The position numbers were made by a program, and so were the translations under genes. Below the pieces are notes generated by a model. That model was not told the DNA's origin. It made no database searches and was given only the letters and a program-made list of their open reading frames with translations. A DNA stretch of 64,000 bases from Saccostrea cucullata (lineage: Eukaryota), in contig NW_026935030.1 in NCBI RefSeq assembly GCF_032062105.1, positions 372,001 to 436,000 on the forward strand. The letters are read 5' to 3'. This document shows positions 10,870 to 53,280 of the stretch, piece after piece (the stretch's first letter is position 1; every line of letters begins with the position of its first letter).

Positions 10870-12190
10870 TCATATAACAAAGAAAGATACTTTGCGGGTT
10901 CCAGTTAATGTTCAACCAAGCCTCTTCCTTTACTCCTCACTAAGATATTTCCAGTAATGAAGGAGAAACTTCAAGAGTACTGCGCAACAATATATTCAAG
11001 AAGTGATGTGAATCAGATGTGGATACTTAAAAATTTCAAAGAACTATTGAAATCACAAGATTTTACCAAAATCAACAGCTTAAAAACTTATGACTTTTTA
11101 ACTTAATAAACAACCCATTCCCCACGATAAATTAAAGTCCAGGCTTTTTGATATCATTGACAGCTGCTTTTTCATTTAAATAAAAGTGGAACTTATGGAT
11201 TTACTTACCTGGTATTTGGTCATTTGCAAAATTATTTTATTAAAACACATTCTGATTGACACACAAGTACTCTGAAGTTGACATCAAAGAGATGCTTGAG
11301 GTTCTGATTTACAATATCTATGTGAATTTTGGAGATCAGGTCTTCCAACAATCTATTGGAATCCCCACGGGTATTAATTGCGCTCCTATATTAGCAGACG
11401 TATTTTTGTATTCATATGAAGCAGAGTTTGTGCAAAATCTTATGCGTGAAAAGAAGAAAACATATGCTGTGGCCTTCAACTCGACATTTAGATATATCGA
11501 CGACGTACTGTCAATTAACAATGGTAAATTCCATTCTTATAACGATGAAATATATCCTGGGGAGCTTGAGATACCACAGAGTCTGACACATCTGTTTCAT
11601 TCTTGGATATTTTACTTGAAAAAGACATTAATGGTAATCTAACAACCAAGCTCTATGATAAGCTTGATCACTTTAACTTTTCTATCGTCAACTTCCCTTA
11701 CTTCTGCAGCAATATACCTTCATAACATGCATAAGGAGTTTATATCTCTCAATTGATTCGATACGCAAGAGCATGCTCTACGTATGAACAATTTCTAAAA
11801 CGAGGTAAATTATTGACAAATTGTCAAACAAGTTGATGAAACAAGAATATCAGCAATCTCGTCTAAAGTCATCATTTCGTAAGTTCTATGGTCGATATAG
11901 TGATCTTGTCAGCAAATTCATTTTATCGAGTCAAATGTTGACTGGCATTTTCCATACTAATTGTTAGTGTATTATTTATACACTGAATTGACGACGGATT
12001 TTTTCCGTTATTTCCGGATCATGTCAGAGAGCACACGGCGGGTGTGACCGGTCCGCAGGGGATGCTCACTCCTCCATGGCACCTGATCAACCTCTGATGA
12101 TTTGGAGGTCCGTGTTTGCTCTGCTCCTCTTTTGTATTGTTTTGTGGACTTTTGATTTTGAATATATTCGTTATCTCCATACATCTCATA
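10870..12190 (+). mobile_element. Penelope-like retroelement (probably Naiad-type: RT ends with no C-terminal endonuclease), degenerate
   Basis: ORF 11256-11642 has QSIGIPTGINCAPILADVFLYSYE..FRYIDDVLSINN; the reading frame ends at ..IFHTNC* (~11968) and is followed directly by the structured 3' module; frameshifts present. Confidence 0.85.
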
Positions 12191-12571: not shown

Positions 12572-12972
12572 ATTATCTTGTGAAAACGACATAATTCTCT
12601 TGTGAAAACGAGATATTATCTTGTGAAAACGAAATAATATCTTGTGAAAACGACATAATATCTTGTGAAAACGAGATAGTATTTTGTGAAAACGAGATAT
12701 TATCTTGTGAAAACGACATAATATCTTGTGAAAACGACATATTATCTTGTGAAAACAAGATATTATCTTGTGAAAACAACTTATTATCTTGTGAAAACGA
12801 GATATTATCTTGTGAAAACGACATAATATCTTGTGAAAACGAGATATTATCTTGTGAAAACGACATAATATCTTGTGAAAACGAGATATTATCTTTTGAA
12901 AACGAGATATGATCTTGTGAAAACGACTTATTATCTTGTGAAAACGACTTATTATCTTGGGAAAAGGACATA
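12572..12972. repeat. 21-bp minisatellite (TTATCTTGTGAAAACGAGATA), ~19 units
   Basis: Direct tandem array; explains the SFSQDNI ORF. Confidence 0.95.
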
Positions 12973-13523
12973 TTTTTTTTATATATAAATGTTCTACAAT
13001 ACAACATGATGTAATTGGGACATCTCTGTTCTTTATGAACGTTCCTTCAACGTTAACGGACGCTTAAGCGAAAAATGTACATTGTGTTCTTACATTTAAA
13101 AATTTCAGATGATATTTCATTCAAATACAAGAGGCCCAAGGACCTTATAGGTCACCTGAGTATCATGTAACAACTTTCCAAAAATTGAATTTGGTTCGTG
13201 TTTTAAACCAGAGGCCATGAAATTCACATTTCGCGGTCTACAAAGCGTAAACTGCCCCAAGTTATGGTATATCGTATGACAAAAGTTGAAATAACCTTCA
13301 TTCCTTAATTTAAAGTCATATCTGCAAAATATCGGCTTGTATTAATTATTTTCATGCATTAATTGGATTAAAAAATATACTTTCTTGGGTCCTAAAACGA
13401 AATAAAACATCCTTAAACTTTATGTTCACAGTCATGTAATATATTCTGTGGAAAAACAGTTTTTACGCCTCCTGTAAAGTACCAAAATTCCCATGTACGA
13501 CCTTTCAATTCCACGGTGTCGAT

Positions 13524-33000: not shown

Positions 33001-36000
33001 ATTCAGTATATGTTTTAAATAACGTAAATGTACTCGTTCAATAATATCGATATTTTCATACCCCATATTTCACAGCCATATAACAATACTGGTAAAACTA
33101 CTTTATCAAACAAATCCAATTGACATTCGAAGGGGAGATTAAACTGCCTAATTTTACGTATCACACCATACATTGCCTTTTGTGCTTGTTCACATAGGTG
33201 TTTTCTTGCTTTACATAATGAGCCTGTACGAGAAAATACAATCCCTAAATAATTAAAATCCTTAACTACTTCTATGATACTGCCATTATATGTAAAAATA
33301 TTCTTTGGCTGTCTGCCCTTTGAAAAAATAAGTATCTTTGTTTTCTTGATATTCACACATAATTTCCATTCTTCACAATATTTGTAAAATTCATTTAATG
33401 CTCTCTGAAGATCTTCAGCAGTTTCGGCAAGAATTACAGTATCATCGGAATAAAATAAGATAAACAGTTTCATATACAAAAACAACTCATCCTGTATACC
33501 TTTGCTAATACTAGACAAACCAACAATATTCTTTTTTGTCAAAAAATCTTCCAAGTCATTAATATATAATGAGAATAAGAAAGGCGATAAGTTTTCACCT
33601 TGTCGTACACCAACATTACAATTAAAAAATTCAGATGACAGACCATTCATTTGTATTTTAGATTTTATACCACTATACATATTTTTAATAAAAGTAAAAC
33701 ATTTACCATTGACCCCACTTCTAAGAAGTTTGCACCAAAGTCCCTCACGCCAGACTGTATCAAACGCTTGTTTAAAGTCTATAAACGCACAAAACAATTT
33801 TCTCTTGCTGTTAATCAATGTCTGGGATAAAAATTGTAATAATAGGATATTGTCTAAAGTAGAGTAACCTTTTCTGAACCCAGTCTGACTTTCTTTAATA
33901 AGCATAACTTCTTCTGCATAATTTTCTAAACGGCTACCAAATATTCTTGTAAAAAGTTTACCTAAACAGCTTAGAAGGGTAATCGGGCGGTAATTTTCAG
34001 GATGCGTTGGGTCACCCTTATTTTTGTAGATTGGTTTCAGGATACCAATTAACCAGTTTTCTGGTACGATACCAGTTTCAAAAATAAGATTGAAAAAAGT
34101 TTATAAATTGGCAAAAATAATGGCAAAGTTGTTCTTATGTGCTCATTTAAAATATTATCGAAGCCCGGGGTCTTACTGTTCTTTAAATCATTGACAGCTG
34201 ATGAAATTTCCTCCCTGGTAATTGGATAATCTAACAGCTCACTATTATTGTAATTATCTACATGTAAATAGTTAGGCCAATTAACCTCAGTACATTCAGT
34301 ATTGCTAGTTTCATTCATTTCTCTAAAATAATTAAACATCGAGTCTAAATCCGCAGAGCCTTGTTCTGATCTTTTAGTACTGTTAAGAATGTTCCAATAT
34401 TCTTTTGTATTTGTTGTACGTAATTTCATAAGTTTCTGCGATAAGTCTTTTCTGTACTGTTTTATTGAGTTATCCATTACCTTTTTGCAATATTTACTTG
34501 CTTTCTTCAGACTTTCTTTATTTTCAATCGTTTTATTTGCGTTATTTATGCGCTTCGCTAAATGAAATTTTCTCCTTGCTGTTTTACAGTTACCGTTAAA
34601 CCATGGTTTATCTTTTTTCTTTACATTACAAGTTCGAAAACTTTTCCTTCCGAATGATTTCTCAGCAGCATTGAAAAATGTATCACACATTCTTGAAATT
34701 ACATTGTTGACACTTTCATTAGTAACATTATTTGAGGTTCTTAAATCTAATAGTTCTTGTTCGATACTTTTTAAAATAGACTTGTCGATGTTTTCACGGA
34801 AATCGTCTGCTTTGTCATTCGACCAGAGCGTTACACGTGATTGGTTATTTACAGGTGTGTTACTAACGGTAGATATAATTTGCTCAATAACAATGCTAAA
34901 TGAAACAGGGCTATATACGTCTGAAAACATTTCACAAAATTCTAGGATGTCAAAGTTTCTTAACAGTTTGAACATTTCCATACTTGCTAGAACATAATCG
35001 ACTGTGCTAGTATTTTTACAAGTGAGTGCTCCTACATCTCTATCGCTACCTACGCGACCATTGACAATATACACATTATTATTTATACAAAAATCTATCA
35101 TCTTATAACCGAAGTTATTATTTGAAAAATCTTTTACAGTCCTGTCAAGAGGAATGTTTACATTATCAAAAAACGTTTCAATATCGTTATTATCAACGCC
35201 AGAATTACATTGTTTAACATTTGTTAAAAATTCATCTGTTATAATAAAGTCATTCAATTTGCCCACTCTGGAATTAAAATCCCCCAGCAAACAAACATGT
35301 TTACAATCTTTGGATATAGACATGAGCTCTTGTTCTATTTCAGTAAAACAATCTGGGGATGAATACTTGCTATTTTCTGGAGGGATATATACAATACCAA
35401 AATAAATGTCCTCCTCCAGATGAAATAGCGATCTATTACATTTGAACCATAATACATATTTACAATCTGTATTGATTATTTTGATATATTTGACAATGGA
35501 ATATCTAATTAATAAAGCAATGCCACCTGATTTTACTCTAGATAATTTACATCTGTTTTTTAAATTATATCATATGAAGAAATAAGATCATTAAATTCCG
35601 TATACTGAAGTCTTCTATTTACACCACAAACATTTAATGATAAAAGCTTTATTTCATTATTTTCTGTCATCAATATAATATTCAGTTTATAGACAAAATT
35701 TCATCATCGGCTAGGGTAAAAATTGTTATTTTAACAAATTTCAAAATTATTACCCTTAACAAGAAGGCATCCACGTGGCAAGGGCTGGACAACGGTATCA
35801 ATTTATTGTTATTAATATTAGATATTTAATTTTTCACATGTAGATAAAATTCCGAAACACTTTCTCTCGTTCGATTTTTATTGGTCATAAATAGATAAAA
35901 TTAATTTATTTTACAAGATAAAAGTTAATAGCACAAGAATGAAATTGTAAATAATTATATAAGACCAGATTAAAATGGGGTGAAATGACCCAGGTAGGAG

Positions 36001-39000
36001 AGAGAAATGACCTACCGTGAAATGACCTACCGTGAAATGGTAGGAGAGAGAAATAACCTGGGAGAGAAAAAGTTTTAGAGAGAAATGACCTGACACCAAC
36101 GGGCTGTGAAAGTAAGTATTTGCAGTAGTAATGCAGCAGTATTAGGAGCGTATATATATTCTTGACATTTTTTTCAAAAGACATCATAAAATGTAACAAA
36201 TTCTAATTTTGTTATGAATTTTAATTCAGGTTTACAATGCACTAACAGTCCCGTGGATCTAGTGTTCCTCATTGATTCCTCTTCCAGCATTTTTCCGAAC
36301 GATTTTACACGTCAGCTGGAATTTTTGGAAAACATAACAGGAGAAATGGACATCGGTCAGCATTTTAACCAATCCAGAGTTGCGGTAATCTCTTTCAGTG
36401 ATGAACCGCGATTGGAATTTACATTAAGCAATTGCACCGAGAAAAAAGACGTACTGGAGGCCATCAGAAGAATTAGCTACATGTCTGGCGGAACCAACAC
36501 CGCATCTGCCATCCACCTGGCTGTGAACGAGGTGTTTAAATCAAAAACTGGTGCTAGAAAAGGAGTAAAGAATATAATTGTTGTTATTACTGATGGAGAA
36601 AGCTTTTCGGAGTCTGAAACAAAAAAATCGGCTTCGCAGGCAAGACATATGGGAATCAATCTGTTTGCAATAGGAGTTGGAACCAGTGTGAATGTGAAAG
36701 AGTTACGTCTAATTGCTGGAAGTTCCGAACACGTCTACCAAGTGTCGAATTACGAAGATCTTAAAAGTATCAAGGATGCCTTGATCAATAAGACTTGCAT
36801 AGGTCTGTTGAGTCTTTAATATGATAATTTATAACAAATTTAGTAATAAAAATGGGTCTTTCGCATATATGCAGTATGACTGACGTCAGCCGCTGATACG
36901 GATCCGACAGGGCTGTTACAGATCTACAGGGATGATACGTATTTTTATCACACCCTTTGTAGATTTAACAGTTCTTTTTAATGTATAAAATAATATATAA
37001 TAAATACACATTTTATTATTCTTTTATTTATTTCTAGTTTCTGACGTAAATGTGTGGTGCGTGCTATAACTTAGTATTTACAATGTAACAAACAAAACAT
37101 TCCCTTTCCTACATCAAATCCCATATTAGCCCTCGACCAATATCAGCCTTTGTGCCTTCAACTCTCTGGTTGATACTGGTGTGATTGACTGATATAGGAT
37201 TTGATGTGTAGAAGGGTATGTATTACTCTCTATGTACCTTTATGATGTTTATTTTGTACATACATATGTACCAGTCATAGTATATCAACGCATGTAATGC
37301 TGTATGCTTTTGTACATCATCTTTAGAAATTCATCAATCAGCATACACCACGAATTTAGAAGAAAACACGCCATTGGATGATACCGTGGACATGAAAAGT
37401 AAGTGATCTTTATAGAGCAGGTCCAAAGACCATAAATTGAGAACAGACTGGAGTCAATATTTTGATTTTCAATATCTTGAGTTTTATTTAATGAATTTGC
37501 ATAAAAAATTTATGCTTAGCATTATATTTCAAACATGTCACGAAAAAAAAAATTGTTTCATTTTTACATTTTTTCAGAAGTTATATTGATTTGAAATATT
37601 GACCTAAGTCTTTTTTTCAGTGTATGGTCTTGGGGCCAGGTCTTCCAAGTGATCTCAAAATTGCCTACTTAGATTTGTTGGCCCTTGATATTATACTTCC
37701 CCTTTAAAATGTTTATTTATTTCACTATAAAACATTATTTATTAACTCTTCATCAAATTTTCCGTGTCTTTAGAAATTCATCAGTCAACAAACACCACAG
37801 ATTTAGAAAAAGATAAAACGTTGAATTGGACCGTGGACTTTGAAAGTGAGTAGTTTTTGAAGAGCATGTCTACCACCTGTCTAACTTAGGAGATCATTTA
37901 AATATGAGAGACAACTTGATCAAAAGGACCTTAGTTTGTTTTTTTCTTTTAATATAATATTGTCCTTTTCCAGTATTCTATTTATGCTACAACAAAATAC
38001 GGTGTTTTTATTCATGAAATGATCTACCTCTGTGTGATTTGTGTAATTTATGAAATTTTCCTTGTTTTTAGAAATTCATCAATCAAAAAACAACACAGAT
38101 TTAGAAAAAGATAAAGCGTTGATTGGGACCTTAAACTTTGAAAGTGAGTAGTTTTTGAAGAGCATGTCTACTATCTAACTTAGGAGATCATTTAAGTATG
38201 AGACAACTTGATCAAAAGGACCTTATTTTTTTTCTTTTAATATAACACTGTCCCTTTCTAGTATTTATTCTATTTATGCTACAACAAAATACGATGTTTT
38301 TATTCATGAAATGGTCTACATTTGTGTGCATCAATCCATAGAAATACATCAAACAACAAATACTTCGAGCATAGAAGACACGCCACAGAATGAGACTGTG
38401 GATTTTGAAAGTAAGTGATTTTCAAAAAGCTCGTCTTCAAAATAAGTATCTAACTTTTGAGATCATTTAGTACAAATGTCCTTTACAAAAACAATAGATT
38501 TTGTCAATTTAAATTTGTTTTGACAATTGTCAGAATCAAACTTAATTTGATAAAAATCTAATTTTTGTAGAAGACACTATTATAAGGACACATTGATCAA
38601 AAGGACTTGTATAGTTCTGTATGAAATTTGATATCAAAATTCACCTATCTGATTTTGAATTTTTATACATAACTGTAAATATAATAGACCAACTCTTTGT
38701 TAAATGTTGTATTTTTGTACATCTGTCTTTAGAAATTCATCAGTCAACAACTACCCAGATTTTACAAGAAGACACTCCAATAAATAAAACAGTGGAGATA
38801 GAATGTAAGTATTTTAGAAAAAAAATATTTTCTTCTCAAGGAATCGCTTTAAATCCAAGTCAAATTTACAGAAAGTATTTATTAATTGTTTTTATTATCA
38901 CGAGTATTATGTACAATATATAACTGAACGTTTAACAAGGCAAGTTTCATGGTTTAGAAACTTTTAGATTGTAGTGGAAAGCCAGCTGATGTTCTTTTCC

Positions 39001-40251
39001 TGCTAGATTCTTCCAGCAGCATATCTCGCAATGATTTCAAAAAGCAACTTAGTTTCATCAAATCGGTTGTAAATGTATTTGACATTAATCCACAAAAAAC
39101 TGCGGTAGGAGTATCCACTTTTAGTGATGATTTTCGGTCTGTTATCCATCTCAATGAATTCACGTCAAAGGAGAGTATTTTCAAGGCTGTCGACAAAGTT
39201 CCTTATCTCAGAGGCGGGACAGACACAGGGAATGCCCTTAAGAACATAATAGACTTTGATTTTAAATTCGCTCGTCCAAATGTTGCCCACATCCTTATTA
39301 TTATAACTGATGGTTTATCACGTGACCCTTTTGAGACTTTTCTACAAGCGAGCAAACTTAAGAAAACCGGAGTTTCTATTTTTGCGATAGGTGTGGGGCC
39401 TTTTGTGGATCAGAAAGAACTAAAAACTATGGCAAGCCCTCCAAAAGAAGGCCTTGATTTTGTATTCAACTTCTCAACGTATGATGCGTTACATTCTATT
39501 AAGAATCTACTTGCCATCAAAACATGTGTCATTGCTGGACTGCATATGAAAGACCGTCGTAAGTATCCAGTATTTTGAGAGGAAGAATAATTTATTTGAT
39601 AAAATTCATGGGTAATGTATTATTGTTAAATTCGATACTCAATCTAATGACGATCACCAGTAAGGTTAATAATAAAGGAAATTGAAAAATGGATTAATTT
39701 TACTTTCAGCAATTTGCATTTTGAACAAACCCGTTGACATTGTCTTCACCTTTAATGCTGCTACAATTGGAAATCGTGGCACTCGAAGTATTTTGAAAAC
39801 AGTCCAAAACTTTGAAAAATTGAGATTTCAAAATGAATCAGACATGCGTGTTGGCGTCATTTCTCAATCATGTGCTTATGGGGGTGACCTTCCATTACAG
39901 ACCCCAAACAAAAATTTAGCAGTAACATTTGATAAGATGTCTTTCCTCATTAAAAGAACGAAAAGCTATGGATTGACCGAGGAGAATGGTGCCAGAAGCG
40001 AGGCAGTCCACATTGTTGTTCTAATTGTTGACACACTTCTGACAATGGAGGACGAGATAGAGATTCTGGAGTTAGAGGCTATTGTAAATAAAATGTATAT
40101 TGCCTACGTGGGCAACATTCACAATAAAAATTCCATTCTCAGTGTTTCCTCGGCTTCTGTGACAACTCTTTCATTGGTTGACTTCACGGCTATAGAGAGC
40201 CTATCGGGATATCTTCAAGAGGAAATATGTCAAATGGTTCAGATTAATTAA
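30084..40251 (+). CDS. Secreted triple-VWA (matrilin/collagen VI-like) protein A, ~709 aa if reconstructed; exon 2 is interrupted by a transposon in this sequence. Exons: 30084-30119, [30270-30286 + 36098-36111], 36230-36802, 37327-37398, 37774-37845, 38072-38143, 38342-38410, 38733-38804, 38968-39558, 39710-40251
   Basis: VWA1 VDLVFLIDSSSSI..GGTNT..VVITDG; VWA2 ADVLFLLDSSSSI..GGTDT..IIITDG; VWA3 lacks MIDAS (FTFNAATI). Reconstructed N-terminus MLRCIFFSVMIM|VSMGSLTGCE|SLQC uses a GC donor (ATG|GCAAGT). The downstream exons are well supported; the first two exons are inferred. Confidence 0.82.
30801..30893. mobile_element. 93-bp MITE with 9-bp TSD (degenerate sibling at ~32462-32522)
   Basis: TIR TAGCTGCAGAACTGTAGCTCTCCGAA (1 mismatch); TSD TAATGGAAT (30792-30800, 30894-30902). 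Confidence 0.88.
32806..35666 (-). mobile_element. Non-LTR retrotransposon (APE endonuclease + RT, RTE/RTEX-like), frameshifted
   Basis: EN start IKLLSLNVCG, LLGDFNSR, STVDYVL; RT QTGFRKGYST, FIDFKQAFD, GVRQGENLSPFLF, YSDD, PVLLYGCEIWG; 3' tail AATAAA(TTGAA)n; flanked by 108-bp direct repeats. Confidence 0.9.
37327..38804 (+). repeat. Five tandemly duplicated 69-72-nt symmetric (phase 1-1) exons of VWA protein A
   Basis: Each starts AG|AAATTCATCA (xIHQS/T) and ends A/T|GT(A/G)AGT; flanking intron sequence is also duplicated (e.g. 37846-38030 vs 38144-38330). Confidence 0.88.
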
Positions 40252-41225
40252 AAAAGAAGCAAGAAACAGATCAAAACTAGTAAAAAAAGGTATAAATTAA
40301 AAGACATCAAATGAAAATCAAACAATCAAGCAATACTTTTTTTAATTGTTAGTACTTTATTTTCTTCTGAAAAATACATTCACATATAATATGTTTTATA
40401 TAAATGAATAAAAAGAAATAAAACGATTTCCTAAAGGTTGTGTTCTTTTGTCTTTTTGGGAAAAAAATTCAAGAATAAAGAAGCCAAATCCTAAAATTCA
40501 ATTAGGGGGGGGTGTAAATTTAGAGGAAATATGAATGACAAATACTTGTACGTTTATACTGATTGATACAAGATTCAAATCTTAAGACAAAGTAAGTAAA
40601 ATAAATCTTATACATGTGTATATATCTAGACGTGAAAGCATTTACGAGAATTTATAAATACAATATAAAGAAATCTTGTAAACCATATCAGACCCGTAGT
40701 AATTGCATAATTGAATATATTTTAGACACTTATTATTGTCCGTTCATGCTACTTAAGATAGAATCGTGGACTGCTCTAGAAATTTAAAATTCAATGTTGT
40801 AGTAAAAATTCTATGGAACATAATGATTACATATCAGAGAAAAAAAAAAAAAAAATACATATACAATAAAATTGATTTTGAGATTGGTCTAAATGTAGTG
40901 GATGATAGCATGAAAACTAGGTATTATAAAATTTACTAAATTGGGTTTTGGTTTACAATAATGAATGAGATACTGAATACTTGTTAACGAATAATACAGG
41001 GTTTTGAGCCATTGAATTATTTTTAAACATTTTGTATCGAACTTTTAAATTACACTTTATTTTTTATTATTTGTACAAGTCAAACAAAAATAGGTCAATA
41101 TAAACAAATGTCTCTCTTACAAATCCAATAAAGATATTTGATAAAAACAACAGTAAAATGAAACGTTAGATGGTAATTGTAATACGTCTGTACTCAAGTA
41201 GCTAGGAATATAATGAAGAAAAGGT

Positions 41226-44200
41226 TTAGTTATTCAAGCTAAGCACAAATGATCTCTTTATGGCTGTGCAAAGTTTATCGAGAATTCTACTGAAAGATGT
41301 GCTCAGATCGGAGTATTGGGGAACCCGTACAAGAAAATTAAAGTTGGGATCGGACGCCAGATCTGCTGCAAATGCTGTGTTTTGTCGGTCGCCGATGGCG
41401 ATGACCATAAGTTCAAAATTGTTATTTCTCTTCATAAATTCTATAGCTTCTCTCTCCCCAGTCGTACTTTCATCCACAATAAGCACACCAATTCTCTTCA
41501 CATTTGAACTGATTGGAAAACTCTTATTCATCGACTGTAATAACTGCCCTATACCGGGAAATTTGAGCTCTGTGAACAGTTTAGTATCACGTCCTAGCGG
41601 TACGTTACTGTATCGTGGACAATTGTCAGTGATGCGACCAACGTTTACTTTACCAGTCGACAAATCGAGACTGGACACAAGCGTGTGGATAAATCGGCCA
41701 ATAACTTCACTTTTCCTGAATCCAAGACTAGAAACGTCGTACGCAAACAGGACATCTGTTTCTTTGTCTCCACTACATGCTAAAAAGAGGTTGAATACTT
41801 CAATATGTACTTGAAAAAAGTTAATTGGCTTTTTAAACCTGGCCTATTTATATAAGGAAGAAACTCAGAAGGACCTAATTATTGTTTTATCGAGTAGGTG
41901 TTATGTCATTGTTCGTGTTCTTCCGTTAAATCAAGAGCCACTTATTCCTTTCTCATTTTTTGAAAGATAATATTTCTGTGAAATGTAATGAAGTAATTTC
42001 CAATGGCAATAAAAAAAATCTTCCTTCCTCCCTTTTCCGAAATATAATGTTTTAACCTTGAATTATCTTTGTATAAAACTAACGATATTGCCTTATTCTC
42101 TGAAGAAATATGTCTCAAATTTCAAGAGGACTTCTTAAAGATTATAATCACAATGATAAAATAAGGTCAAACATTTAACAAAAAATGAAATAGTAAGTGT
42201 TTATATCCTTTATACTTACTTTGAAGATTTTGTGGAACGTCTGGTATAACAGCACATGTAGAGAGTACCAATAAATCTTTAATTGCATGAAGACCATTAA
42301 AGTCACTGACGTGGAAGACGTGCTTGCTGTTAGGGTCATTTGCTATTCTCTTCAACTCTGTCTTGTCAACTTTGTCCCCAATTCCAATTGCAAAGATGGT
42401 TATGTTTTCATTTCTTGCAAGTTCAGATTGCTCCATAGTTTTTTGAGGTAATCTTGAAATGCCATCAGTCATGACAATAGCAATTTTGATAGCACCAGGA
42501 CGAGTCACCCCTTCTCGGAAGCCGTACTGGCGGACGAATCTGATGGCTTCATTTGTGTTGGTCACCCCTTTGCTATATGTCACGCCACTAATCTGTCTCT
42601 TGAGCTCCTCCCGTGTTCGTTTTGAATCCAGAGCAACAACATTTCGTGTTCTGTTGCTAAACACCACAACTCCTGCCCTGATCCTTCCATGGACGTTGTC
42701 AATCTTCAAATCATCTATCATTGCGTTGACAAAATTTAGTTCTTTATCAAAGTCCACTTTCCAAATGCTACTAGAAGCATCTAGAACAAAATAGATATCA
42801 GCCTCCTTTTTTCCACAATCTGTAAAAAACAAAACAAATACCAGGTACATTTTACAAAATTATTTTCTCCATAGTTACAAAAAAGGATTAATGCCATGCT
42901 CCTTTGTCAATTTAAAGCATATTCAGACAAAGATTATGAAAAGTTGGCATCTTTGCAAGGTTTATCTTTGAGATGTCCGCGTGGATGTACTTCAACAATC
43001 AAAAAGCTGTTTTGTTTCTGTGTTTTAGTTGTTTTGTATGCTCAATTGATTTTTCCCTTGTTATTTGTTTTATTCTATTTTGTTTTCCTTGAATCAGTTT
43101 TGTTTATTGGGTCTTAATGTTTCTTGTTTAAAAATATGTCTCTAATACATATTACATAATTTGGAAAATATTTTTGATATTTTATTTTAGTTTCGTATAG
43201 CGACGTCTGTAACATTTTGGTGATAGGCAAAAGCTTACTTTAGGAGCATGACTATATTTAAATATTGTTCACATTTGATTTCCTAAAATTTATATCAGTT
43301 GTTACATAACTTTTCAATCAACCTTATTTAATGATTATTTATGTATTTAATACAATTTATAAATTATAAAGTGGAAAAAGCAGAATGCTTTATTCGGCTG
43401 CTATTTACAACGGATGTTACGATTTAATCAGCTTTATTCTTTGTGTTATCTGCAGGGAAGCCATTGACTACATGTATCTTTATTGTAAGTAGTCTAAGGT
43501 GCCCTTGTTCTTTCCGTAAACAAAACACTTAAAATTTGGAACAAACTTTAACTTCCTTGTTTTATCATCTTCAAATCATCTTTAAAGGGAAGAAATAACT
43601 TTTACGAGGAAAGCAGCATGCTTATTTAAAAAAAAAATCTTTCTTTATGAGCATCTTGGGATAAATATTTTAGAAAAGAATCCTAAAATGTATAAAGAAA
43701 AAATAAAAGACTAGAAACATCGGGGATAACTCCAATTATAATAAAATAGTCTCTTCTACGCCTTGACAAATGATATTAATACACTGTCTTAAGACACGTG
43801 GGTGGTGAAAACGTAATTGATAATTAAGTTAAAGTGGTCCACTTACAGTCAGCGGGCTTGTCGCTTAAGAACTTGTGGTAATGATTGGTGTTAGGTTGAT
43901 CGTGATACTGGTAATAGTGCGACTTGTAGAACGCCTCTGGCACCGACACGTCCTTGGATGCTATAGCTGTGGAAGGTGGAGGTGTTGTGGTAGTTGTTGT
44001 TGTTGTTGTTGTGGTGGTGGTGGTAGTGGTCACTTTAATGAAAAATTGTAACATTAACAAAACTGACTTTTAAATGGCATTGACTTCTTCTTGATTTTTT
44101 AATTAAACTTAAATTACTCTTGATAATGCAAAAGATTCATCATTTTCCCCCTATTATTTAGAATTGCTTTGTTAACATTATGAATACAATCCTTGATGTT

Positions 44201-45294
44201 AATATAGATCACTGAATTTTAAAAAAGCTATATATTTATTAACATGTACCACAATTCTAAAGAAATCAGATCTCCAATGGGGCATATTCAACCAAAGCCA
44301 AGAAACATATGAATGTTAAAACATCTCAACTATTTGTAAAGCGTACCTTCGCATGCATTCGATGGCAATCTGTCTTTAATGCCACCAAGTTCCGAGTAGG
44401 ATGATACTGTGAAGACATGTTGTCCAATTGGTTCACTCCCAATACCTTCTAGTTCATGAAGATCAAGGTATTTACCAACACCTATGGCAAATATTTTAAT
44501 ACCCTTTTCTCTGGCAATTTTTGCAGCCTCTAGGGTGGATTCCCTATTCTGTGACCTTCCATCAGTGATGATGATTGCAACATGATTAGCGTTCGGTCGT
44601 CCTCCGTACCTTTCATTAAACATATAGCCATATAAAAACTTAAGTGCGGAAGCAGTATTCGTGCGGTAGCCATTTTTGTGCCTGATGTACCGAAGAGCAG
44701 TTTTCACCCTTCTTTTGTCAAGATATGACCGCAGATAAAATTGGGGCCAGAACGTTTGTGCAAAAGTTATTGCACCCACTCTTGTGTCATGTATGTCCGG
44801 TCCAATTTTAAATTCGTCGACAATGTTTTCGACGAAAGCCATTTGTTTTTTGAAGTCTGGTCCCCAGATACTTCTAGAGGTATCCAGAAGGAAGACAAGA
44901 TCGATGCCCTTACAAGGGGCTTGTCCATTTTCTAAAACTATGTTAAAACGAAAGATTACAAAAATAATAACGTACAAGCAACCGTTTCTGGATATTTTAA
45001 ATAGTCATATTTGATTCGTTACTTGTTAGCTGTGTTTTCTTGAGGACTACGCATGGTCATATTTCAATTGCTTGAATTTGTATTTTTTTTTTCTAAATAA
45101 TTGGGATGAAAAATGTTACCTTCATTATTAATGTTCTTGCCAGACTGAAATAAAATAAAATAAGAATTATGAATTATCAAAAAAAAAAAAAAAATCAAAT
45201 CATTTAAGGAAAAAAAAATATCGACACAAATAAAACTCACCACAAAGTTGATAAGTAACAAGGTTGTAAATATTTCACAGAATACCATGTCCAT
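41226..45294 (-). CDS. Secreted triple-VWA protein B, ~669 aa. Exons: 45294-45241, 45144-45120, 44937-44347, 44032-43847, 42819-42220, 41779-41226
   Basis: Signal peptide MDMVFCEIFTTLLLINFVSG; VWA1 IDLVFLLDTSRSI..TNT..IIITDG; linker Thr16-PPP plus His/Tyr-rich segment; VWA2 ADIYFVLDASSSI..VMTDG; VWA3 degenerate (LFAYDVSSLG); GT-AG introns, phases consistent. Confidence 0.88.
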
Positions 45295-48212: not shown

Positions 48213-48602
48213 GAATGAAATTCATGAATAACTTTCCCTTTTCCATGTCAGGACTTAACTTCCAATCAATTTTGTAATTAAGCTGTAAAACAATTAAAAT
48301 TGATGCTTAACAACTTTATTTTTATATTTATTTGATAAAAAAATCAATGATCTACATTCATAAAAACTCATATTTACTGAGGAAGTCAGGTTCTTTGTCC
48401 ATGTTTGGTGTAGCTGTGCTTGGAAGTCAGGACTCTGCTGTAAACATAATGTAAACAAGAATGAAATTCATGAATAACTTTCCCTTTTCCATGTCAGGAC
48501 TTAACTTCCAATCAATTTTGTAATTAAGCTGTAAAACAATTAAAATTGATGCTTAACAACTTTATTTTTATATTTATTTGATAAAAAAATCAATGATCTA
48601 CA
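48213..48602. repeat. 144-bp direct duplication (48213-48356, 48459-48602) with 102-bp spacer
   Basis: GAATGAAATTCATGAATAAC..AATCAATGATCTACA occurs twice, apparently identical. Confidence 0.9.
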
Positions 48603-51353
48603 ACGACAATCCTGCAATAAACTTGATCTCTTTATTGCCTAGTTTTGGAAGTCGATTGTTAATAATGTACCGTGTATATTTACTACATTGAAAACAATTT
48701 AAACAGGGAAATTTTCATTTAATATAAAACATTAATGATTAAAATGTGACTTTTTCAGATTCATTTTTCTGTGAAACCTGCAATCTTTGATGCGAACTCC
48801 TGAACGAATTTTGCTGTTAATTGCTCTGTAAGTTTCTGACAAGTTGTTTCCATTTCTTCAGCTGCTTGTTTAATCAAGTCTGCCTTTTCTTTTTCCTTTT
48901 CTTCTAGTTCCTTTTCGAGTTTTCCTCTTTCAGCTGCGAGTCTAGATATTTCTTTTTTATTTTCCTTATCTTTTTCCTTCAGTTCATTTATTTGGTTGTT
49001 TTTGATTTGAATGCGTGTCTTTAAATCTTTGATCGAAAGTTCCAAGCTCTTAACCTTCTCAACATGTTTTTTCTCTGTAGGAAACACGTACATATTATGA
49101 AGTAAAATGTAGGTAATATTTCTGAATGCATTTCAGTGCAATCTTATATCAAAATGTCTCCTACTGCGAATTGATAAGTGACATAATTATGTATTAAGCC
49201 AACTGCAATTACTTTCTTTTAGGGATGTCAACGAGTACCCGGTTAACCGGGTACTCGATCGAACGTCCGAGTATCGAATACTAAAATCGGTACTCGGTTA
49301 CTCGGATGTATATTTTTGAATTTTTCCAAGCTTATTTATTAATGCATTAACCAATTTGTTTTAAAACGTTAAATGTTCATTGCACCTGTACATATAGTAA
49401 TTAGGGTTTCCTACGCCTCTAAATGACCGTTATCGCCTGTGGCCGTGTTTATACAGTAATTATCATGACCAAGCACCTGTTACCTGGCTTTTCTCACCTC
49501 CAGCTGTCTTCTACCCTTATTTTTGGTTTGCTTAATTATTTGTTTTCACTGATCGTCGTTTAAGGTCTATTATGTTTAAACAGTTAGGTGATTTTGTCAA
49601 TTCGCCGAGAAGCCGTAAATTCTCTGGAAAAGAGATAGATGATATTACGTGTGCACGTGCGATTGTTGATGACATGTGGTTGTGTTTGATTACATACCAA
49701 TACAAATGGTTGATGGCAAAGGCTTTCAAAAAACCGATGTCCATCGTTGCACTAAACTACAAAATACCGTCCCTTAATACTATAAAATCTAGGATCGAAA
49801 AGTGTCTGAAAATCGTAAATCCGTTCTGTTAGGAGAACTTTATCAAGTTTAAGTTGATACTGTACGTAGCTCTGATACATGTTCACATCAAACGCAACAA
49901 AGAGTTACATTACAATTACGGAGCAGATTTAAAAAAAAAAAAAAAACACTGTGGACCACTTATGATTTTATTTCTTGTGTTTATCTGATAAATAAATACT
50001 AATGAAAATGTTATATTAAATTTCGTCGGGCGCGAACTGTTCATCATTGTTACAACAGAAATACATTTACGGGTAAACCTCCTATCAGAGCATGTGGCTT
50101 TATTTCTACAAAAGTTTACAATGTTTTACAGTCTTCAATTTAGTTCATATTTAGCTACACTTTACCGAGTACCCGAGTACTCGATCGGAAAAACGTCCGA
50201 GTAACCGAGTAATAAAAATTGACCGATTTGACATCCCTACTTTCTTTATAAAAATTTGAGATTTAAAGTTTGACATGTTGACACATTCTTTATCAAATGA
50301 AATAAGGTATTTTTTATGAAGTCTTTCATTACCTTCATCTTTCGGAATAATGCAGACAAAGTGCTGTTTGTTGATTAAACCAATTCTTATTGCTCTCTCC
50401 GTGGGCTTTGTGGGATAAAATATTACTTCCTCTTCTGACGGATAATATAAAACATTAACGTTTACAGAGAATGCGTCTGCTGTAAACATAATGTAAAACG
50501 GAAGCCAGGAAAATGCAGCTGGTTCATTTATGGTCATATCTTTCCATTCCATCGTTTTGGAAAACTCGCGCAGTATCTGGCAATAAAACATTAGAAATAA
50601 GAAATAAATATATTAACTGAATTGCATAAAAAATATTTTATTTTCATTTGACATACCTTCGTGTTCTTGGCATTAGCAATGGATATTTTTAGGGTTTCTT
50701 TAAGGGATTCCCAAGATGTTAATGTTTTATCCAAAGTCTTTCTTTCTACTTTTTCGATCTGTCTTTGTAACGCGGTATGAAGAGCAATGAATAACGAGTT
50801 TGGTCCACGTTGCTGTCTTGCAGTGTCCGACCTCCATCCATCTAGTATTTCCAGTGATAACTTACCCAGCCATTCTCTTGCAGGCCCATCGTCAAAGATT
50901 CCATCTTCCGGTTTGTATCCAATAAGAACTTGCAATCCATTTTTATTTTCTTGGAAGATAAAATGTTGAATATCTGTAATAAAGAAGGTAATTACAATGT
51001 AAATTGATAGCATAATTCCCTTGCATTTTACTTTTATACATGATTTTAAAATACTTACATTGCCTTCTTACGACATATAACCACGTCATAATTGTACTGC
51101 GGGCTTTCACATTTTTGACCATATTCTTCTTTATGCTACATAATGCATCCAGAGAATTTGTTATTGTTGATGGTCCCATCGGAATAAGATTTTCCTTATA
51201 AAGTGACATCCACAAGCCATGAATCTGTTGCTTATTTTCAAGTGGCGTGACTGTTGTCAGCTCATTGAACATTTTGTCGAGTGTTTGAGTGATTTGCGAG
51301 TATCTTATATTTGGTTTTCCCTCGGCCATTTTCAGAATCTCTTCCAACCACAT
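48598..51353 (-). CDS. Uncharacterised ~388-aa protein: putative death-fold-like N-terminus, OTU-like domain lacking the catalytic Cys, C-terminal coiled coil. Exons: 51353-51059, 50973-50657, 50576-50333, 49074-48778, 48611-48598 (or exon 4 reads through to the stop at 48761)
   Basis: Canonical GT-AG junctions, phases 1,0,1,1, open frame throughout; GPNSLFIALHTAL aligns to OTU DGNCLFxAL; SWLPFYIMFTADAFSVNVNV and IRIGLINKQHFVCI align to the OTU Trp-helix and His loop; heptad-rich KVKSLELSIKDLKTRIQ..KLEKELEEKEKEK. Confidence 0.75.
49220..50239 (+). mobile_element. hAT transposon deletion derivative (1020 bp) in an intron
   Basis: TIR TAGGGATGTCAA/TTGACATCCCTA, 8-bp TSD CTTTCTTT, subterminal CGAGTA/TACTCG repeats; ZBED/hAT-like transposase remnant (..AFKKPMSIVALNYKIPSLNTIKSRI) at 49572-49832. 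Confidence 0.9.
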
Positions 51354-51666
51354 ATATTAATATTCTACCTGAAGTTTTTATTTCTTGTTTCCCTCTTATT
51401 TAAATATCAAGGCTAATAATACAATTTTGTTTCGATTCATAGAGTACCAAATAGACCACAAATAAAAGAAATAATAACGTCCCTGAAATCTGAATTTAAA
51501 AGTTTAAAACCCTTTAAAAGATTCAAGAGTTCATTCTAAATATGTGATATTACCATGTCATTTGACATTTGACATTTGTCTATGTGCGAAACACATATTC
51601 ATGGTGGAAGATACCTTTCCATGCTATGAGATATCATCTGCTGACTAAAATCTATTTTCTGTAAAG

Positions 51667-53280
51667 ATGAATAAAGGTATGTGTATTTATTTGTAATATA
51701 TAGATATATGGCTGTGCACTGATTCTCTTGAATGAAAATCATTGCAAAAAGTTCTATTTACATTTACAAATATTTCTAAATTTCTTATGCATACGTAGAA
51801 AGAGCCAAGGATGAAGAATCTAAAATGATTATAGAGCTGCGTAGAATATTCTTACACGACGAACAAAAATGCTGTGATTCAAATGCTTTGAAGGAATTAA
51901 AAATTCGTCTTAGACACCATATACCACAGACGCTGCAAGGAAAAGGAGCAGAATTTCAGGAAATATTTGAATCATTAGTTCATGACGGAAAAATTACCTT
52001 AGGAAACTATGAGTTCTTGCACAATGCTTTAACGGAAATTGAACAGATAACAGCCGCAAACAAGATAAAAGATTATCAATTAAAGATACAACAAATATTA
52101 TCTTTAAGTAAGTGATTTATATCATTTAAAAATTATACTTAATGACATATTTAACAATGTTTATTATTTCATGAAATGTAACAGGATGCTTACTCCACTC
52201 AGGCACATGATCCTTTCGCGGGTTCGTTTTTATGCCCTGTTTTCAATTCTGTTTTGTTTGGATTATTTGTAGATGGATCAGTGTTTGATCTCTTTTTCAT
52301 ATTAATTAGCCTCTTTACGATAGCTACGGTGCTTCTCTTTTTCAGGGCAAAATAATTAAGTTTGACGAAGTATTTGTTGATAGATAATTAAATGACGTAT
52401 ACTAAATAATTACTTTTACGTCATATTTCACCAAAATACATCATTTTGCCCTGCAAATGAGCAGTATCGCGGTTATCNNNNNNNNNNNNNNNNNNNNNNN
52501 NNNNNNNNNNNNNNNNNNNNNNNNNNNNNNNNNNNNNNNNNNNNNNNNNNNNNNNNNNNNNNNNNNNNNNNNNNNNNNNNNNNNNNNNNNNNNNNNNNNN
52601 NNNNNNNNNNNNNNNNNNNNNNNNNNNNNNNNNNNNNNNNNNNCGTGATGTAAGTCCTGGATATTGGTCTGGATAGCTTAGTCGGTAGAAAGTCTGATGA
52701 CATGCAAATGTCCCATGCTAGGTTCACGTGGTCCAGTCATATATTTTCTCTTTTTCTGTTAAAGTGCAAATCCAGAGGGAGCATTGTGAGTGCACGTTTT
52801 GTCCGTCTATATCAATCTGCTCCTTATTTCTACATTAGTTGTAACCTTGAATAACAAAAAAAAAAAAATTAGCCAAATTCGATGTCAAATAAAAAACTTG
52901 ATCCCAAGTTACTTTTTTGATCAAAGCAAAGCCATAGGAATCAGGGTTCTCATACGCTCCATCTTACACAAGTAAACGTGCGTTATGCTTTGTAAATTGA
53001 ACAGTTTCTTCTTTTTTTAGATTCCAGTTGTGAAGAGGAATTGAAAATGATCTCAGGAAACGGGGAAAATTCTAGCATAAAAACTACAGAATTCAAATAT
53101 CCATCGACTTCTTTAAATGAGAGAAGTTATTCTAGTGTTTCATCATCTTCATCAGGTTACTGTTTAGTGGAAAGTTATAGAGACGACTCCATCTCCTCGC
53201 CACCAACATCGGCGGAAAATTCGAACATATATAGAACGTATGAAATCGAAATTGCTTCAATACTGCGAAGAGGAAGTTGA
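51667..53280 (+). CDS. DED-like (death effector domain) protein with Ser-rich tail, ~192 aa. Exons: 51667-51676, 51799-52107, 53021-53280 (the assembly gap in intron 2 could hide more)
   Basis: Phase-1 GT-AG introns; LKELKIRLRHHIP..EFQEIFESLVHDGKITLGNYEFLHNALTEI..AANKIKDY follows the DED helical pattern (LxxLKxxL..IP..LFxxLxxxGxIxxxNxxxLxxxL..IxxY). Confidence 0.7.
52478..52643. other. Assembly gap (166 N)
   Basis: Run of N. Confidence 1.

What the first reader, a model, noticed from the sequence alone, without database searches (positions are those of the whole stretch)
48598..53280. Head-to-head gene pair of putative death-fold proteins: candidate two-component signalling or cell-death module
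Seen: two spliced, open genes diverge with start codons only ~313 bp apart (51353 minus, 51667 plus). The plus gene is a single DED-like domain plus a Ser-rich tail. The minus gene starts with a ~98-aa helical exon that weakly follows DED spacing (PLENKQQIHGLWMSLYKENLI..TNSLDALCSI), followed by an OTU-like domain and a coiled coil. Each putative death-fold domain lies in its own ~300-nt exon ending in phase 1. Known: death-fold domains bind homotypically, and divergently paired immune genes (e.g. paired plant NLRs) act as co-regulated sensor/executor units. Inference: a co-expressed heterodimer linking DED (caspase-8/FADD-type) signalling to ubiquitin recognition. I do not recognise this architecture from described gene families.
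Basis: partly seen in the sequence, partly recalled or inferred. Interest (0 to 1): 0.75.

Follow-up and report, generated by a model that had tools for sequence, protein, structure and literature searches.

The report
Oyster divergent DED and CARD-like gene pair
Two small oyster genes that point away from each other from a shared start region encode a death-effector-domain protein and a protein with a CARD-shaped head, and the pair has been copied as a unit, but nothing yet shows that the two proteins work together.

Summary
The two gene models exist as described. All splice sites are GT-AG and both coding lengths divide by three (389 and 192 codons). The N gap lies in intron 2 of the plus gene.

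The plus gene is a single-DED protein with a Ser-rich tail. Pfam DED scores E 2.8e-7, just under the curated cut-off. All 6 family members match DED, and the family profile hits caspase-8 DEDs at E 7e-8.

The "OTU-like" middle domain rests on motif resemblance only. Ser replaces the Cys in 4 of 4 homologues. No profile method supports OTU, and the fold could not be tested.

The same divergent pairing recurs at two other loci of this genome. At one of them the DED gene's 10-nt first exon still sits about 0.5 kb from the partner's start, although its intron 1 has grown to about 20 kb. Both genes are under purifying selection.

RNA support is thin: a few reads and one splice junction. A DED-DED heterodimer is not supported.

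The scan has noted other DED-only genes in this genome, but not this pair.

The parts
51059..51353 (-). Minus gene exon 1 (295 nt, ends in phase 1): 98-aa helical, CARD-shaped domain. The likely start is the Met at 51329-51327 (MAEG), which is conserved in the paralogues.
50657..50973 (-). Minus gene exon 2 (317 nt): first half of the middle domain, with GPNS-LFIAL where an OTU would have DGNC-LFRAL.
   Evidence: Ser in 4 of 4 homologues. Only 1 true homologue (P0001) among 1.84 billion representatives. No Pfam or PDB profile hit. hhalign against own-genome OTUs gave 0.2%.
50333..50576 (-). Minus gene exon 3 (244 nt, ends in phase 1): second half of the middle domain, with IRIGLINKQHFVCI where an OTU would have its His strand.
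   Evidence: ESM Atlas leads to OTU (0.89) and otubain (0.85). AF2 failed, pLDDT 38.9. hhalign 0.2%.
48761..49074 (-). Minus gene exon 4 with stop: Lys/Glu-rich, coiled-coil-like tail.
   Evidence: Only sub-threshold Pfam hits to coiled-coil families. RNA reads at 1-3x and the exon 3-exon 4 junction. No coiled-coil predictor was run.
49220..50240 (.). High-copy repeat element (about 1 kb) inserted in minus-gene intron 3.
   Evidence: Read pile-ups with loose ends at 49219/49220 and 50239-50242. 19-nt inverted repeat at 49291-49309 / 50193-50211.
51354..51666 (.). 313-bp spacer between the two ATGs (28% G+C): putative bidirectional promoter plus 5' UTRs.
   Evidence: Its plus-gene end (51639-51697) is the only non-exon block that aligns with the C16552 paralogue (59 nt, 85%).
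51667..51676 (+). Plus gene exon 1: ATGAATAAAG, 10 nt, donor GTATGT, ends in phase 1.
   Evidence: Conserved with its donor in C16552. The phase-1 acceptor TAG|A of exon 2 is kept in 3 of 3 loci. No RNA read seen here.
51799..52107 (+). Plus gene exon 2 (309 nt, phase 1 at both ends): death effector domain.
   Evidence: Pfam PF01335 E 2.8e-7, 31.1 bits, under the 35.9 cut-off. 6 of 6 family members match DED, best 3.7e-10. Family profile against PDB: caspase-8 DED1 and DED2, E 7.3e-8.
52478..52643 (.). Assembly gap (N) inside plus-gene intron 2; not filled.
   Evidence: Intron length is comparable with the gap-free paralogue.
53021..53280 (+). Plus gene exon 3 with stop: Ser-rich tail (23 S of 85 aa); the core RSYS.VSSSSSGYC.VE is kept in the C16552 paralogue.
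   Evidence: No Pfam hit.

Best explanation
This is a real, lineage-restricted pair of protein-coding genes transcribed in opposite directions from a spacer of about 0.3 kb.

The plus gene makes a protein of about 192 aa: one divergent death effector domain followed by a Ser-rich, probably disordered tail. By analogy with small DED-only proteins, it most likely docks onto or caps FADD/caspase-8-type DED assemblies, with the tail as a regulatory part.

The minus gene makes a protein of about 389 aa in three parts:
- a CARD-shaped helical head;
- a middle domain whose motif order recalls an OTU papain-like fold, with Ser in place of the nucleophile Cys;
- a coiled-coil tail.
It most likely acts as an oligomerising scaffold that is recruited through its head and is non-catalytic, or at best atypical.

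The pair was duplicated as a unit, and the shared start region has been kept. Co-regulation is therefore plausible. I infer that the two proteins feed into the same cell-death or immune network through separate homotypic partners (DED with DED, CARD with CARD), not by binding each other's death fold.

Shown: the gene models, the DED, purifying selection, and the repeated pairing. Inferred: the CARD fold, the OTU likeness, co-regulation, and every functional step.
For: Gene models: consistent GT-AG splice sites, and coding lengths that divide by three.

Selection: dN/dS is 0.20-0.71 over 12 exon-pair comparisons, with dS 0.5-1.3. Splice phases are kept in the paralogues.

DED: Pfam E 2.8e-7. 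6 of 6 members match. Caspase-8 DED1 and DED2 hit at E 7.3e-8, 9 distinct caspase-8 sequences in all. Orthologue P0003 carries a precomputed PF01335 hit.

CARD shape: AF2 pLDDT 72.4, pTM 0.60. In VIA wide, 19 of 50 listed rows name a CARD. By my reading of the aligned chain ranges, 5 more align to the CARD ranges of Apaf-1, CED-4, Dark and cIAP1. None names a DED, death domain or pyrin domain.

OTU motifs: Ser at the Cys position in 4 of 4 homologues and His kept in 2 of 2. The best local hhalign pairs are the expected ones, in the expected order. The language-model search points to OTU and otubain.

Pairing: the same divergent orientation is found on C16552 (with its haplotig C14231) and on C9250. 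No ORF of 120 aa or more lies in the spacers. The mini-exon with the ATG is conserved about 0.5 kb from the partner's Met on C16552, although DED exon 2 lies about 20 kb away. By dN, both genes group the window copy with C16552 and place C9250 outside.

RNA: reads on the last minus exon and one exon 3-exon 4 junction.
Against: - The window copy's DED score (31.1 bits) is under Pfam's cut-off of 35.9. The same profile also hits calbindin D9k at E 2.5e-4.
- The position of the RxDL motif (recalled from memory) reads QITA in the alignment.
- OTU: no Pfam, PDB or hhalign support, and the exon 3 model failed.
- Expression is very low in the two runs read, with no reads on minus exon 1 or plus exon 1.
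- The mini-exon was not found on C9250.
- The copies decay independently.
- Conserved linkage after a segmental duplication can be passive.
- Linkage in other species could not be tested.
Confidence: 0.45

Rival explanations
1. The two genes are only neighbours. Two unrelated lineage-specific genes happen to share a bidirectional promoter, as many animal genes do. A segmental duplication copied both, so the repeated pairing is inherited rather than selected, and there is no functional link.
For: The spacers differ greatly between loci: 0.3 kb between the ATGs here, and 9-21 kb between the domain exons elsewhere. The copies decay independently: the DED is broken on C14231 only, and the C9250 partner has no detectable exons 3-4. 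A more distant DED paralogue on C13488 has no partner within the 10 kb fetched. The two death folds show no likeness.
Against: At synonymous divergence of about 1, the first-exon adjacency and a 59-nt 5' block are still kept on C16552, while the rest of the spacer no longer aligns. Both genes carry domains of the same signalling superfamily.
Confidence: 0.35
2. One reading: the two N-terminal death folds bind each other, forming a heterodimer that links DED signalling to ubiquitin recognition by a pseudo-OTU.
For: Both domains are probably death folds. The head-to-head pairing recurs. Ser replaces Cys in all 4 homologues while the His is kept.
Against: The minus head models as a CARD, not a DED. 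hhalign between the two domain families gives 0.7%. From established knowledge, death-fold binding is as a rule within one subfamily. The OTU fold and ubiquitin binding are untested.
Confidence: 0.1
3. The pair is a decaying or silent gene family: open frames persist, but the genes are barely expressed and on their way to loss.
For: Depth was at most about 3x, and on one exon only, in two oligo-dT runs of which about 45% was read. One haplotype has a broken DED. The C9250 partner is truncated. The family is tiny, at 3 loci.
Against: dN/dS is well under 1 in all exons. Splice sites and phases are kept. The window copy has no stop or frameshift. Immune genes are often silent without a challenge.
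Confidence: 0.1

Closest known systems
PEA-15 and other small DED-only regulators (c-FLIP short, viral FLIPs, DEDD)
   Same: The plus gene encodes one DED and little else. Like PEA-15 (recalled), the DED is followed by a flexible tail rich in serines that could be phosphorylated. The DED profile matches caspase-8 DED1 and DED2.
   Different: There is no sequence orthology to any named DED protein. The RxDL position reads QITA (alignment; the motif is recalled). FLIPs have two DEDs. The family was found only in bivalve-type fragments (P0003, P0004) and in own-genome paralogues.
CARD plus coiled-coil scaffolds (CARD9, CARD11/CARMA family)
   Different: A domain of about 190 aa sits between the head and the coiled coil. 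There is no sequence match to Pfam CARD. The coiled coil is short, at about 100 aa.
OTU deubiquitinases of death and NF-kB signalling (A20/TNFAIP3), and OTU-like pseudoenzymes (FAM105A/OTULINL, recalled)
   Same: The motif order recalls an OTU: G-x-N-S-L-F-x-A-L, then a helical stretch, then W...V.V.V.YY, then I.I.L....HF. The nucleophile is replaced, as in pseudo-deubiquitinases.
   Different: No profile or structural evidence for the OTU fold. Ser in place of Cys in 4 of 4. The Asp of DGNC is missing. There are no zinc fingers or UBA/UIM parts.
Head-to-head paired immune genes (e.g. paired plant NLRs)
   Same: Divergent orientation with a short shared start region, and duplication as a unit.
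   Different: No sensor or executor domains of that kind. No evidence of interaction or co-expression. The copies decay independently.

Membership tests
Death effector domain (Pfam PF01335), plus gene exon 2 | Significant match to the DED sequence profile | tested here: met
   E 2.8e-7, but 31.1 bits is under the curated 35.9 for the window copy. 6 of 6 family members match at E <= 0.01, best 3.7e-10. The family profile hits caspase-8 DED1 and DED2 at E 7.3e-8. Caveat: calbindin D9k at E 2.5e-4 in the same search.
Death effector domain (Pfam PF01335), plus gene exon 2 | Six-helix death fold | not tested
Death effector domain (Pfam PF01335), plus gene exon 2 | RxDL motif in helix 6 (typical of most DEDs; recalled from memory, not from a call) | tested here: not met
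   In the alignment, the column just after caspase-8 ...FRINR corresponds to QITA in the window copy. The paralogues also lack R-x-D-L there.
   No Pfam DED hit at E <= 10 for 3 of 3 members. hhalign against the plus-gene DED family gave 0.7%. No DED among the 50 VIA rows.
CARD (death-fold superfamily), minus gene exon 1 | CARD-type helical bundle | tested here: inconclusive
CARD (death-fold superfamily), minus gene exon 1 | Match to the CARD sequence profile | tested here: not met
   No CARD hit in Pfam at E <= 10 or in PDB sequences.
OTU cysteine protease (Pfam PF02338), minus gene exons 2-3 | Match to the OTU sequence profile | tested here: not met
   No Pfam hit at E <= 10 for 4 of 4 and 2 of 2 members. 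Nothing in PDB by profile. hhalign against 12 own-genome OTU domains gave 0.2% for each exon. The exons were searched apart, which weakens all of these tests.
OTU cysteine protease (Pfam PF02338), minus gene exons 2-3 | Catalytic Cys at the start of the first core helix | tested here: not met
   Ser in 4 of 4 homologues (N-S, H-S, D-S, N-S).
OTU cysteine protease (Pfam PF02338), minus gene exons 2-3 | Catalytic His on a C-terminal strand | tested here: inconclusive
   A His in (Q/N)HFVCI is kept in 2 of 2 homologues. Its equivalence to the OTU His rests on reading by eye; hhalign did not align it.
OTU cysteine protease (Pfam PF02338), minus gene exons 2-3 | Papain-like OTU fold | tested here: inconclusive
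The exon 3 model failed (pLDDT 38.9). The only lead is from the ESM Atlas: OTU 0.89, otubain 0.85.
Co-regulated divergent gene pair | Start sites under 1 kb apart on opposite strands | tested here: met
   313 bp between the ATGs. About 0.5 kb on C16552.
Co-regulated divergent gene pair | Arrangement conserved beyond one locus | tested here: met
   The same orientation is found at 3 of 3 distinct loci holding the partner gene. First-exon adjacency is shown at 2 of 3 and was not found on C9250. Other species could not be tested.
Co-regulated divergent gene pair | Correlated expression | tested here: inconclusive
   Depth was too low in the 4 runs laid.

The most novel reading that the evidence does not exclude
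This is a bivalve-specific two-gene death-fold cassette that has been duplicated and kept as a unit around a shared bidirectional promoter. One gene encodes a Ser-for-Cys OTU-like ubiquitin reader with a CARD-type head and an oligomerising coiled coil. The other encodes a DED-only adaptor. Together they couple ubiquitin-chain sensing to caspase-8-type activation. That architecture and wiring appeared in no paper I could find.
Probability: 0.12. Interest if true: 0.7.

Novelty: new variant of a known kind. Interest (0 to 1): 0.4.

Why it matters
Bivalves have greatly expanded and reshuffled death-fold and ubiquitin-system genes, and few of the resulting architectures have been studied.

This pair offers a small, tractable case: a DED-only protein next to a CARD-shaped, OTU-like, coiled-coil protein, copied together. 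It allows two direct tests. One is whether gene order reflects function in invertebrate cell-death signalling. The other is whether a Ser-for-Cys OTU-like domain binds ubiquitin without cutting it.

If the two proteins are unrelated in function, the finding is just two more lineage-specific death-fold genes.

Tried and rejected
- **EndoGI lead.** The single-sequence search of minus exon 2 hit the Drosophila EndoG inhibitor (3ism, E 0.002, both repeats). I read passages of PMC2790893: that domain is a helical solenoid. The hit vanished with the 4-sequence profile, so I dropped it as chance.
- **Calbindin D9k.** The plus DED hit it at E 0.085 as a single sequence and at 2.5e-4 with the profile. 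I rejected it as the main reading. DED scores 3-4 orders of magnitude better, Pfam lists no EF-hand or S100 family, and the would-be calcium loop is two residues short in the alignment. A structure would settle it, and none was left.
- **AF2 of minus exon 3 alone** failed (pLDDT 38.9). I did not search with that model.
- **ESM Atlas for exon 2** gave penicillin-amidase fragments at low recognition, which I treat as noise.
- **Bridging to canonical OTUs.** hhalign against 12 OTU domains from this genome's transposons gave 0.2%. The OTU set was not diverse (10 from one family, 2 from another). Profile searches of the own genome found no more distant members of the partner family.
- **Homologue searches.** Minus exons 1 and 3 found nothing. 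Minus exon 2 found one 126-aa fragment, plus one spurious bacterial repeat protein (P0002), among 1.84 billion representatives.
- **Linkage in other species.** Two metagenome scans were blank. The contigs on record for P0003 and P0004 are under 1.4 kb.
- **Mini-exon on C9250.** No match with up to 3 mismatches.
- **Literature.** Three searches were seen as listings and abstracts. Passages of PMC8195603 were read: OTU does not occur in its main text. I found no description of a CARD or DED plus OTU-like architecture in bivalves. Supplementary files were not seen and may list such architectures.
- **Coiled coil.** This was judged from composition and sub-threshold Pfam hits only.

Full report
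**What is there**

The region holds two open, spliced gene models on opposite strands.

| Gene | Exons | Coding length |
|---|---|---|
| Minus | 51353-51059, 50973-50657, 50576-50333, 49074-48761 | 1170 nt (389 codons plus stop) |
| Plus | 51667-51676, 51799-52107, 53021-53280 | 579 nt (192 codons plus stop) |

- All introns start with GT and end with AG, and the phases fit (arithmetic on coordinates only, since I never joined exons).
- The ATGs are 313 bp apart. The paralogues keep only the second Met (MAEG), and one has a TAG just upstream of it. The real minus start may therefore be 51329, which gives 337 bp.
The DED exon has phase 1 at both ends.

**The N gap**

The gap (52478-52643) lies inside plus-gene intron 2 (52108-53020). 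The model does not need a frame across it. On C16552 the same two exons lie about 847 nt apart with no N, against 913 nt here, so nothing suggests a hidden exon. The left flank of the gap is high-copy in a DNA-like run, which suggests a repeat. Continuity across the gap remains unknown. I did not fill it.

**Plus gene**

- Exon 2 hits Pfam DED at E 2.8e-7, 31.1 bits. That is below the curated 35.9.
- I aligned six family members: the window copy, paralogues on C16552, C9250 and C13488, and database fragments P0003 and P0004 at 66-68% identity. All six match DED, best E 3.7e-10.
- The family profile finds nine distinct caspase-8 sequences in the PDB (E 7.3e-8 to 4.9e-5), with both DED1 and DED2 aligned.
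- The same search lists calbindin D9k at E 2.5e-4.
- In the caspase-8 alignment, the place of the RxDL motif (recalled from memory) reads QITA, so this is a divergent DED.
- Exon 3 encodes a tail with 23 Ser in 85 residues. Its core is conserved on C16552.
- The own genome holds at least 19 exon matches to this DED profile.
- Earlier notes of this scan describe other DED-only genes in the same genome (s1-729485). I did not check them.

**Minus gene, head**

- Exon 1 has no Pfam or PDB sequence match. It has no homologue in the 5.8-billion-protein search.
- hhalign against the plus-gene DED family gives 0.7%.
- AlphaFold on the three paralogue sequences gives five helices, pLDDT 72.4, pTM 0.60.
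- Foldseek against the PDB finds nothing below E 1.
  - 19 of the 50 listed rows name a CARD.
  - By my reading of the chain ranges, 5 more align to the CARD ranges of Apaf-1, CED-4, Dark and cIAP1.
  - None names a DED, death domain or pyrin domain.
- My reading: a death fold of CARD type, at about 55-60%.

**Minus gene, middle and tail**

- Read by eye, exons 2-3 follow the OTU order:
  - GPNS-LFIALHTAL against DGNC-LFRAL;
  - a helical stretch;
  - SWLPFYIMFTADAFSVNVNVLYY against the helix and strand after the variable loop;
  - IRIGLINKQHFVCI against the His strand.
- The Ser is kept in 4 of 4 homologues and the His in 2 of 2.
- Statistics do not back this reading:
  - no Pfam hit at E <= 10;
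  - nothing in the PDB by profile;
  - hhalign 0.2% against 12 OTU domains taken from this genome's own transposons. The best local pairs there are exactly the expected ones.
- The language-model search lists an OTU cluster (0.89) and an otubain cluster (0.85) for exon 3. That is a lead only.
- The exon 3 model failed (pLDDT 38.9). Folding the joined domain was barred.
- An exhaustive HMMER search with exon 2 found one true homologue, a 126-aa fragment at 46% identity, among 1.84 billion representatives. The family is therefore very narrow.
- Exon 4 is Lys/Glu-rich with only sub-threshold coiled-coil-type Pfam hits.

**The pairing**

The partner gene occurs at three distinct loci only: the window, C16552 and C9250. 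C14231 mirrors C16552 at 98-99% identity over about 37 kb, so I count it as a haplotig.

| Locus | DED paralogue | Distance between domain exons | Notes |
|---|---|---|---|
| Window | divergent orientation | about 0.45 kb | both intact |
| C9250 | divergent orientation | about 9 kb | mini-exon not found; partner exons 3-4 not detected |
| C16552 (haplotig C14231) | divergent orientation | about 21 kb | mini-exon kept near partner's start; DED broken on C14231 only |

- No ORF of 120 aa or more lies in the spacers.
- On C16552 the 10-nt first exon of the DED gene, with its ATG, its donor and a 5' block (59 nt, 85% identity), still lies about 0.5 kb from the partner's Met. DED exon 2 is about 20 kb away, so the head-to-head start region was kept while intron 1 grew.
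- On C9250 I could not find the mini-exon, and exons 3-4 of the partner are not detectable.
- On C14231 the DED exon carries a stop and a frameshift. Its C16552 allele is intact.
- dN/dS is 0.20-0.71 in 12 exon-pair comparisons, with dS 0.5-1.3. Both genes have been under purifying selection since an old duplication.
- By dN, both genes group the window copy with C16552. This fits co-duplication, but with three loci the agreement has a one-in-three chance.

**RNA**

I laid two oligo-dT raw-read runs of the same species label (about 45% of each read) and two sets of Logan contigs.

- Depth is 1-3x on minus exon 4 and below 1 on minus exons 2-3.
- Depth is zero from 50836 to 51705, which covers minus exon 1, the spacer and plus exon 1.
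- One run shows single reads on plus exon 2 and on the plus 3' end.
- The reads differ from the window by a few percent at fixed places, as a second allele would.
- Two 61-nt contigs of an RNA library end at 49076. Their 12 loose letters match the end of exon 3 with one mismatch, which supports the exon 3-exon 4 junction.
- No other junction reached the listing threshold. Co-expression cannot be judged.

**Reading**

The observation largely stands. There are probably two death-fold proteins, and the pairing is inherited across copies with its start region kept. But the two folds belong to different subfamilies with no detectable likeness, so a homotypic heterodimer is unlikely. The ubiquitin link rests on motifs. 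Conserved linkage after a segmental duplication can be passive.

I put 0.45 on a co-regulated pair acting in the same network through separate partners.

**Comparison with known systems**

- The plus protein works most like PEA-15-type single-DED regulators. It is a member of the DED family by profile and not an orthologue of any named one.
- The minus protein resembles CARD plus coiled-coil scaffolds with an inserted OTU-like, probably non-catalytic module. It fails the sequence tests for both CARD and OTU, so I do not file it as a member of either.
- I found no paper describing this architecture (listings and abstracts; passages of PMC8195603). Supplements were closed and may list it.

**Limits**

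- Earlier notes of this scan call the organism a rock or hooded oyster. I did not verify this.
Linkage in other species therefore stayed unchecked.

Noticed in passing
window 49220-50240: A high-copy repeat of about 1 kb sits in intron 3 of the minus gene. Reads and contigs pile up on its ends, with loose ends at 49219/49220 and 50239-50242, and a 19-nt inverted repeat lies at 49291-49309 / 50193-50211. It looks like a non-autonomous DNA transposon.
   Followed up: partly
window 36214-44977: A cluster of at least four exons or ORFs encoding von Willebrand factor A domains on both strands (Pfam VWA E 1e-38 to 1e-45, plus one weak hit) lies upstream of the pair.
   Followed up: partly
window 33015-35323: A LINE-like element: a reverse-transcriptase ORF (RVT_1, E 1.8e-31) follows a 424-aa ORF with no Pfam hit. 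A second RT fragment lies at 11256-11642.
   Followed up: no
G000:C16552 and G000:C14231 (L019-L020, L025-L030): The two contigs are mirror images at 98-99% identity over about 37 kb, so they are probably haplotigs. The DED exon is intact on C16552 but carries a TGA and a frameshift on C14231. This is either a possible pseudogene polymorphism or an assembly error.
   Followed up: partly
whole genome G000: At least 147 matches to Pfam OTU above the cut-off, most of them inside open frames of 2,000-2,800 aa. This fits the transposon-borne OTU domains that earlier notes of this scan describe.
   Followed up: no
window 51639-51697: The only non-exon block that still aligns with the C16552 paralogue includes GCTGACT upstream of the plus-gene ATG. 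It could be a 5' UTR or promoter element. I did not test it against any motif library.
   Followed up: no
window 12573-13007: A 144-aa minus-strand ORF made of a repeated SFSQDN(I/K/M) unit. It is a tandem repeat read as protein, probably satellite-like DNA.
   Followed up: no
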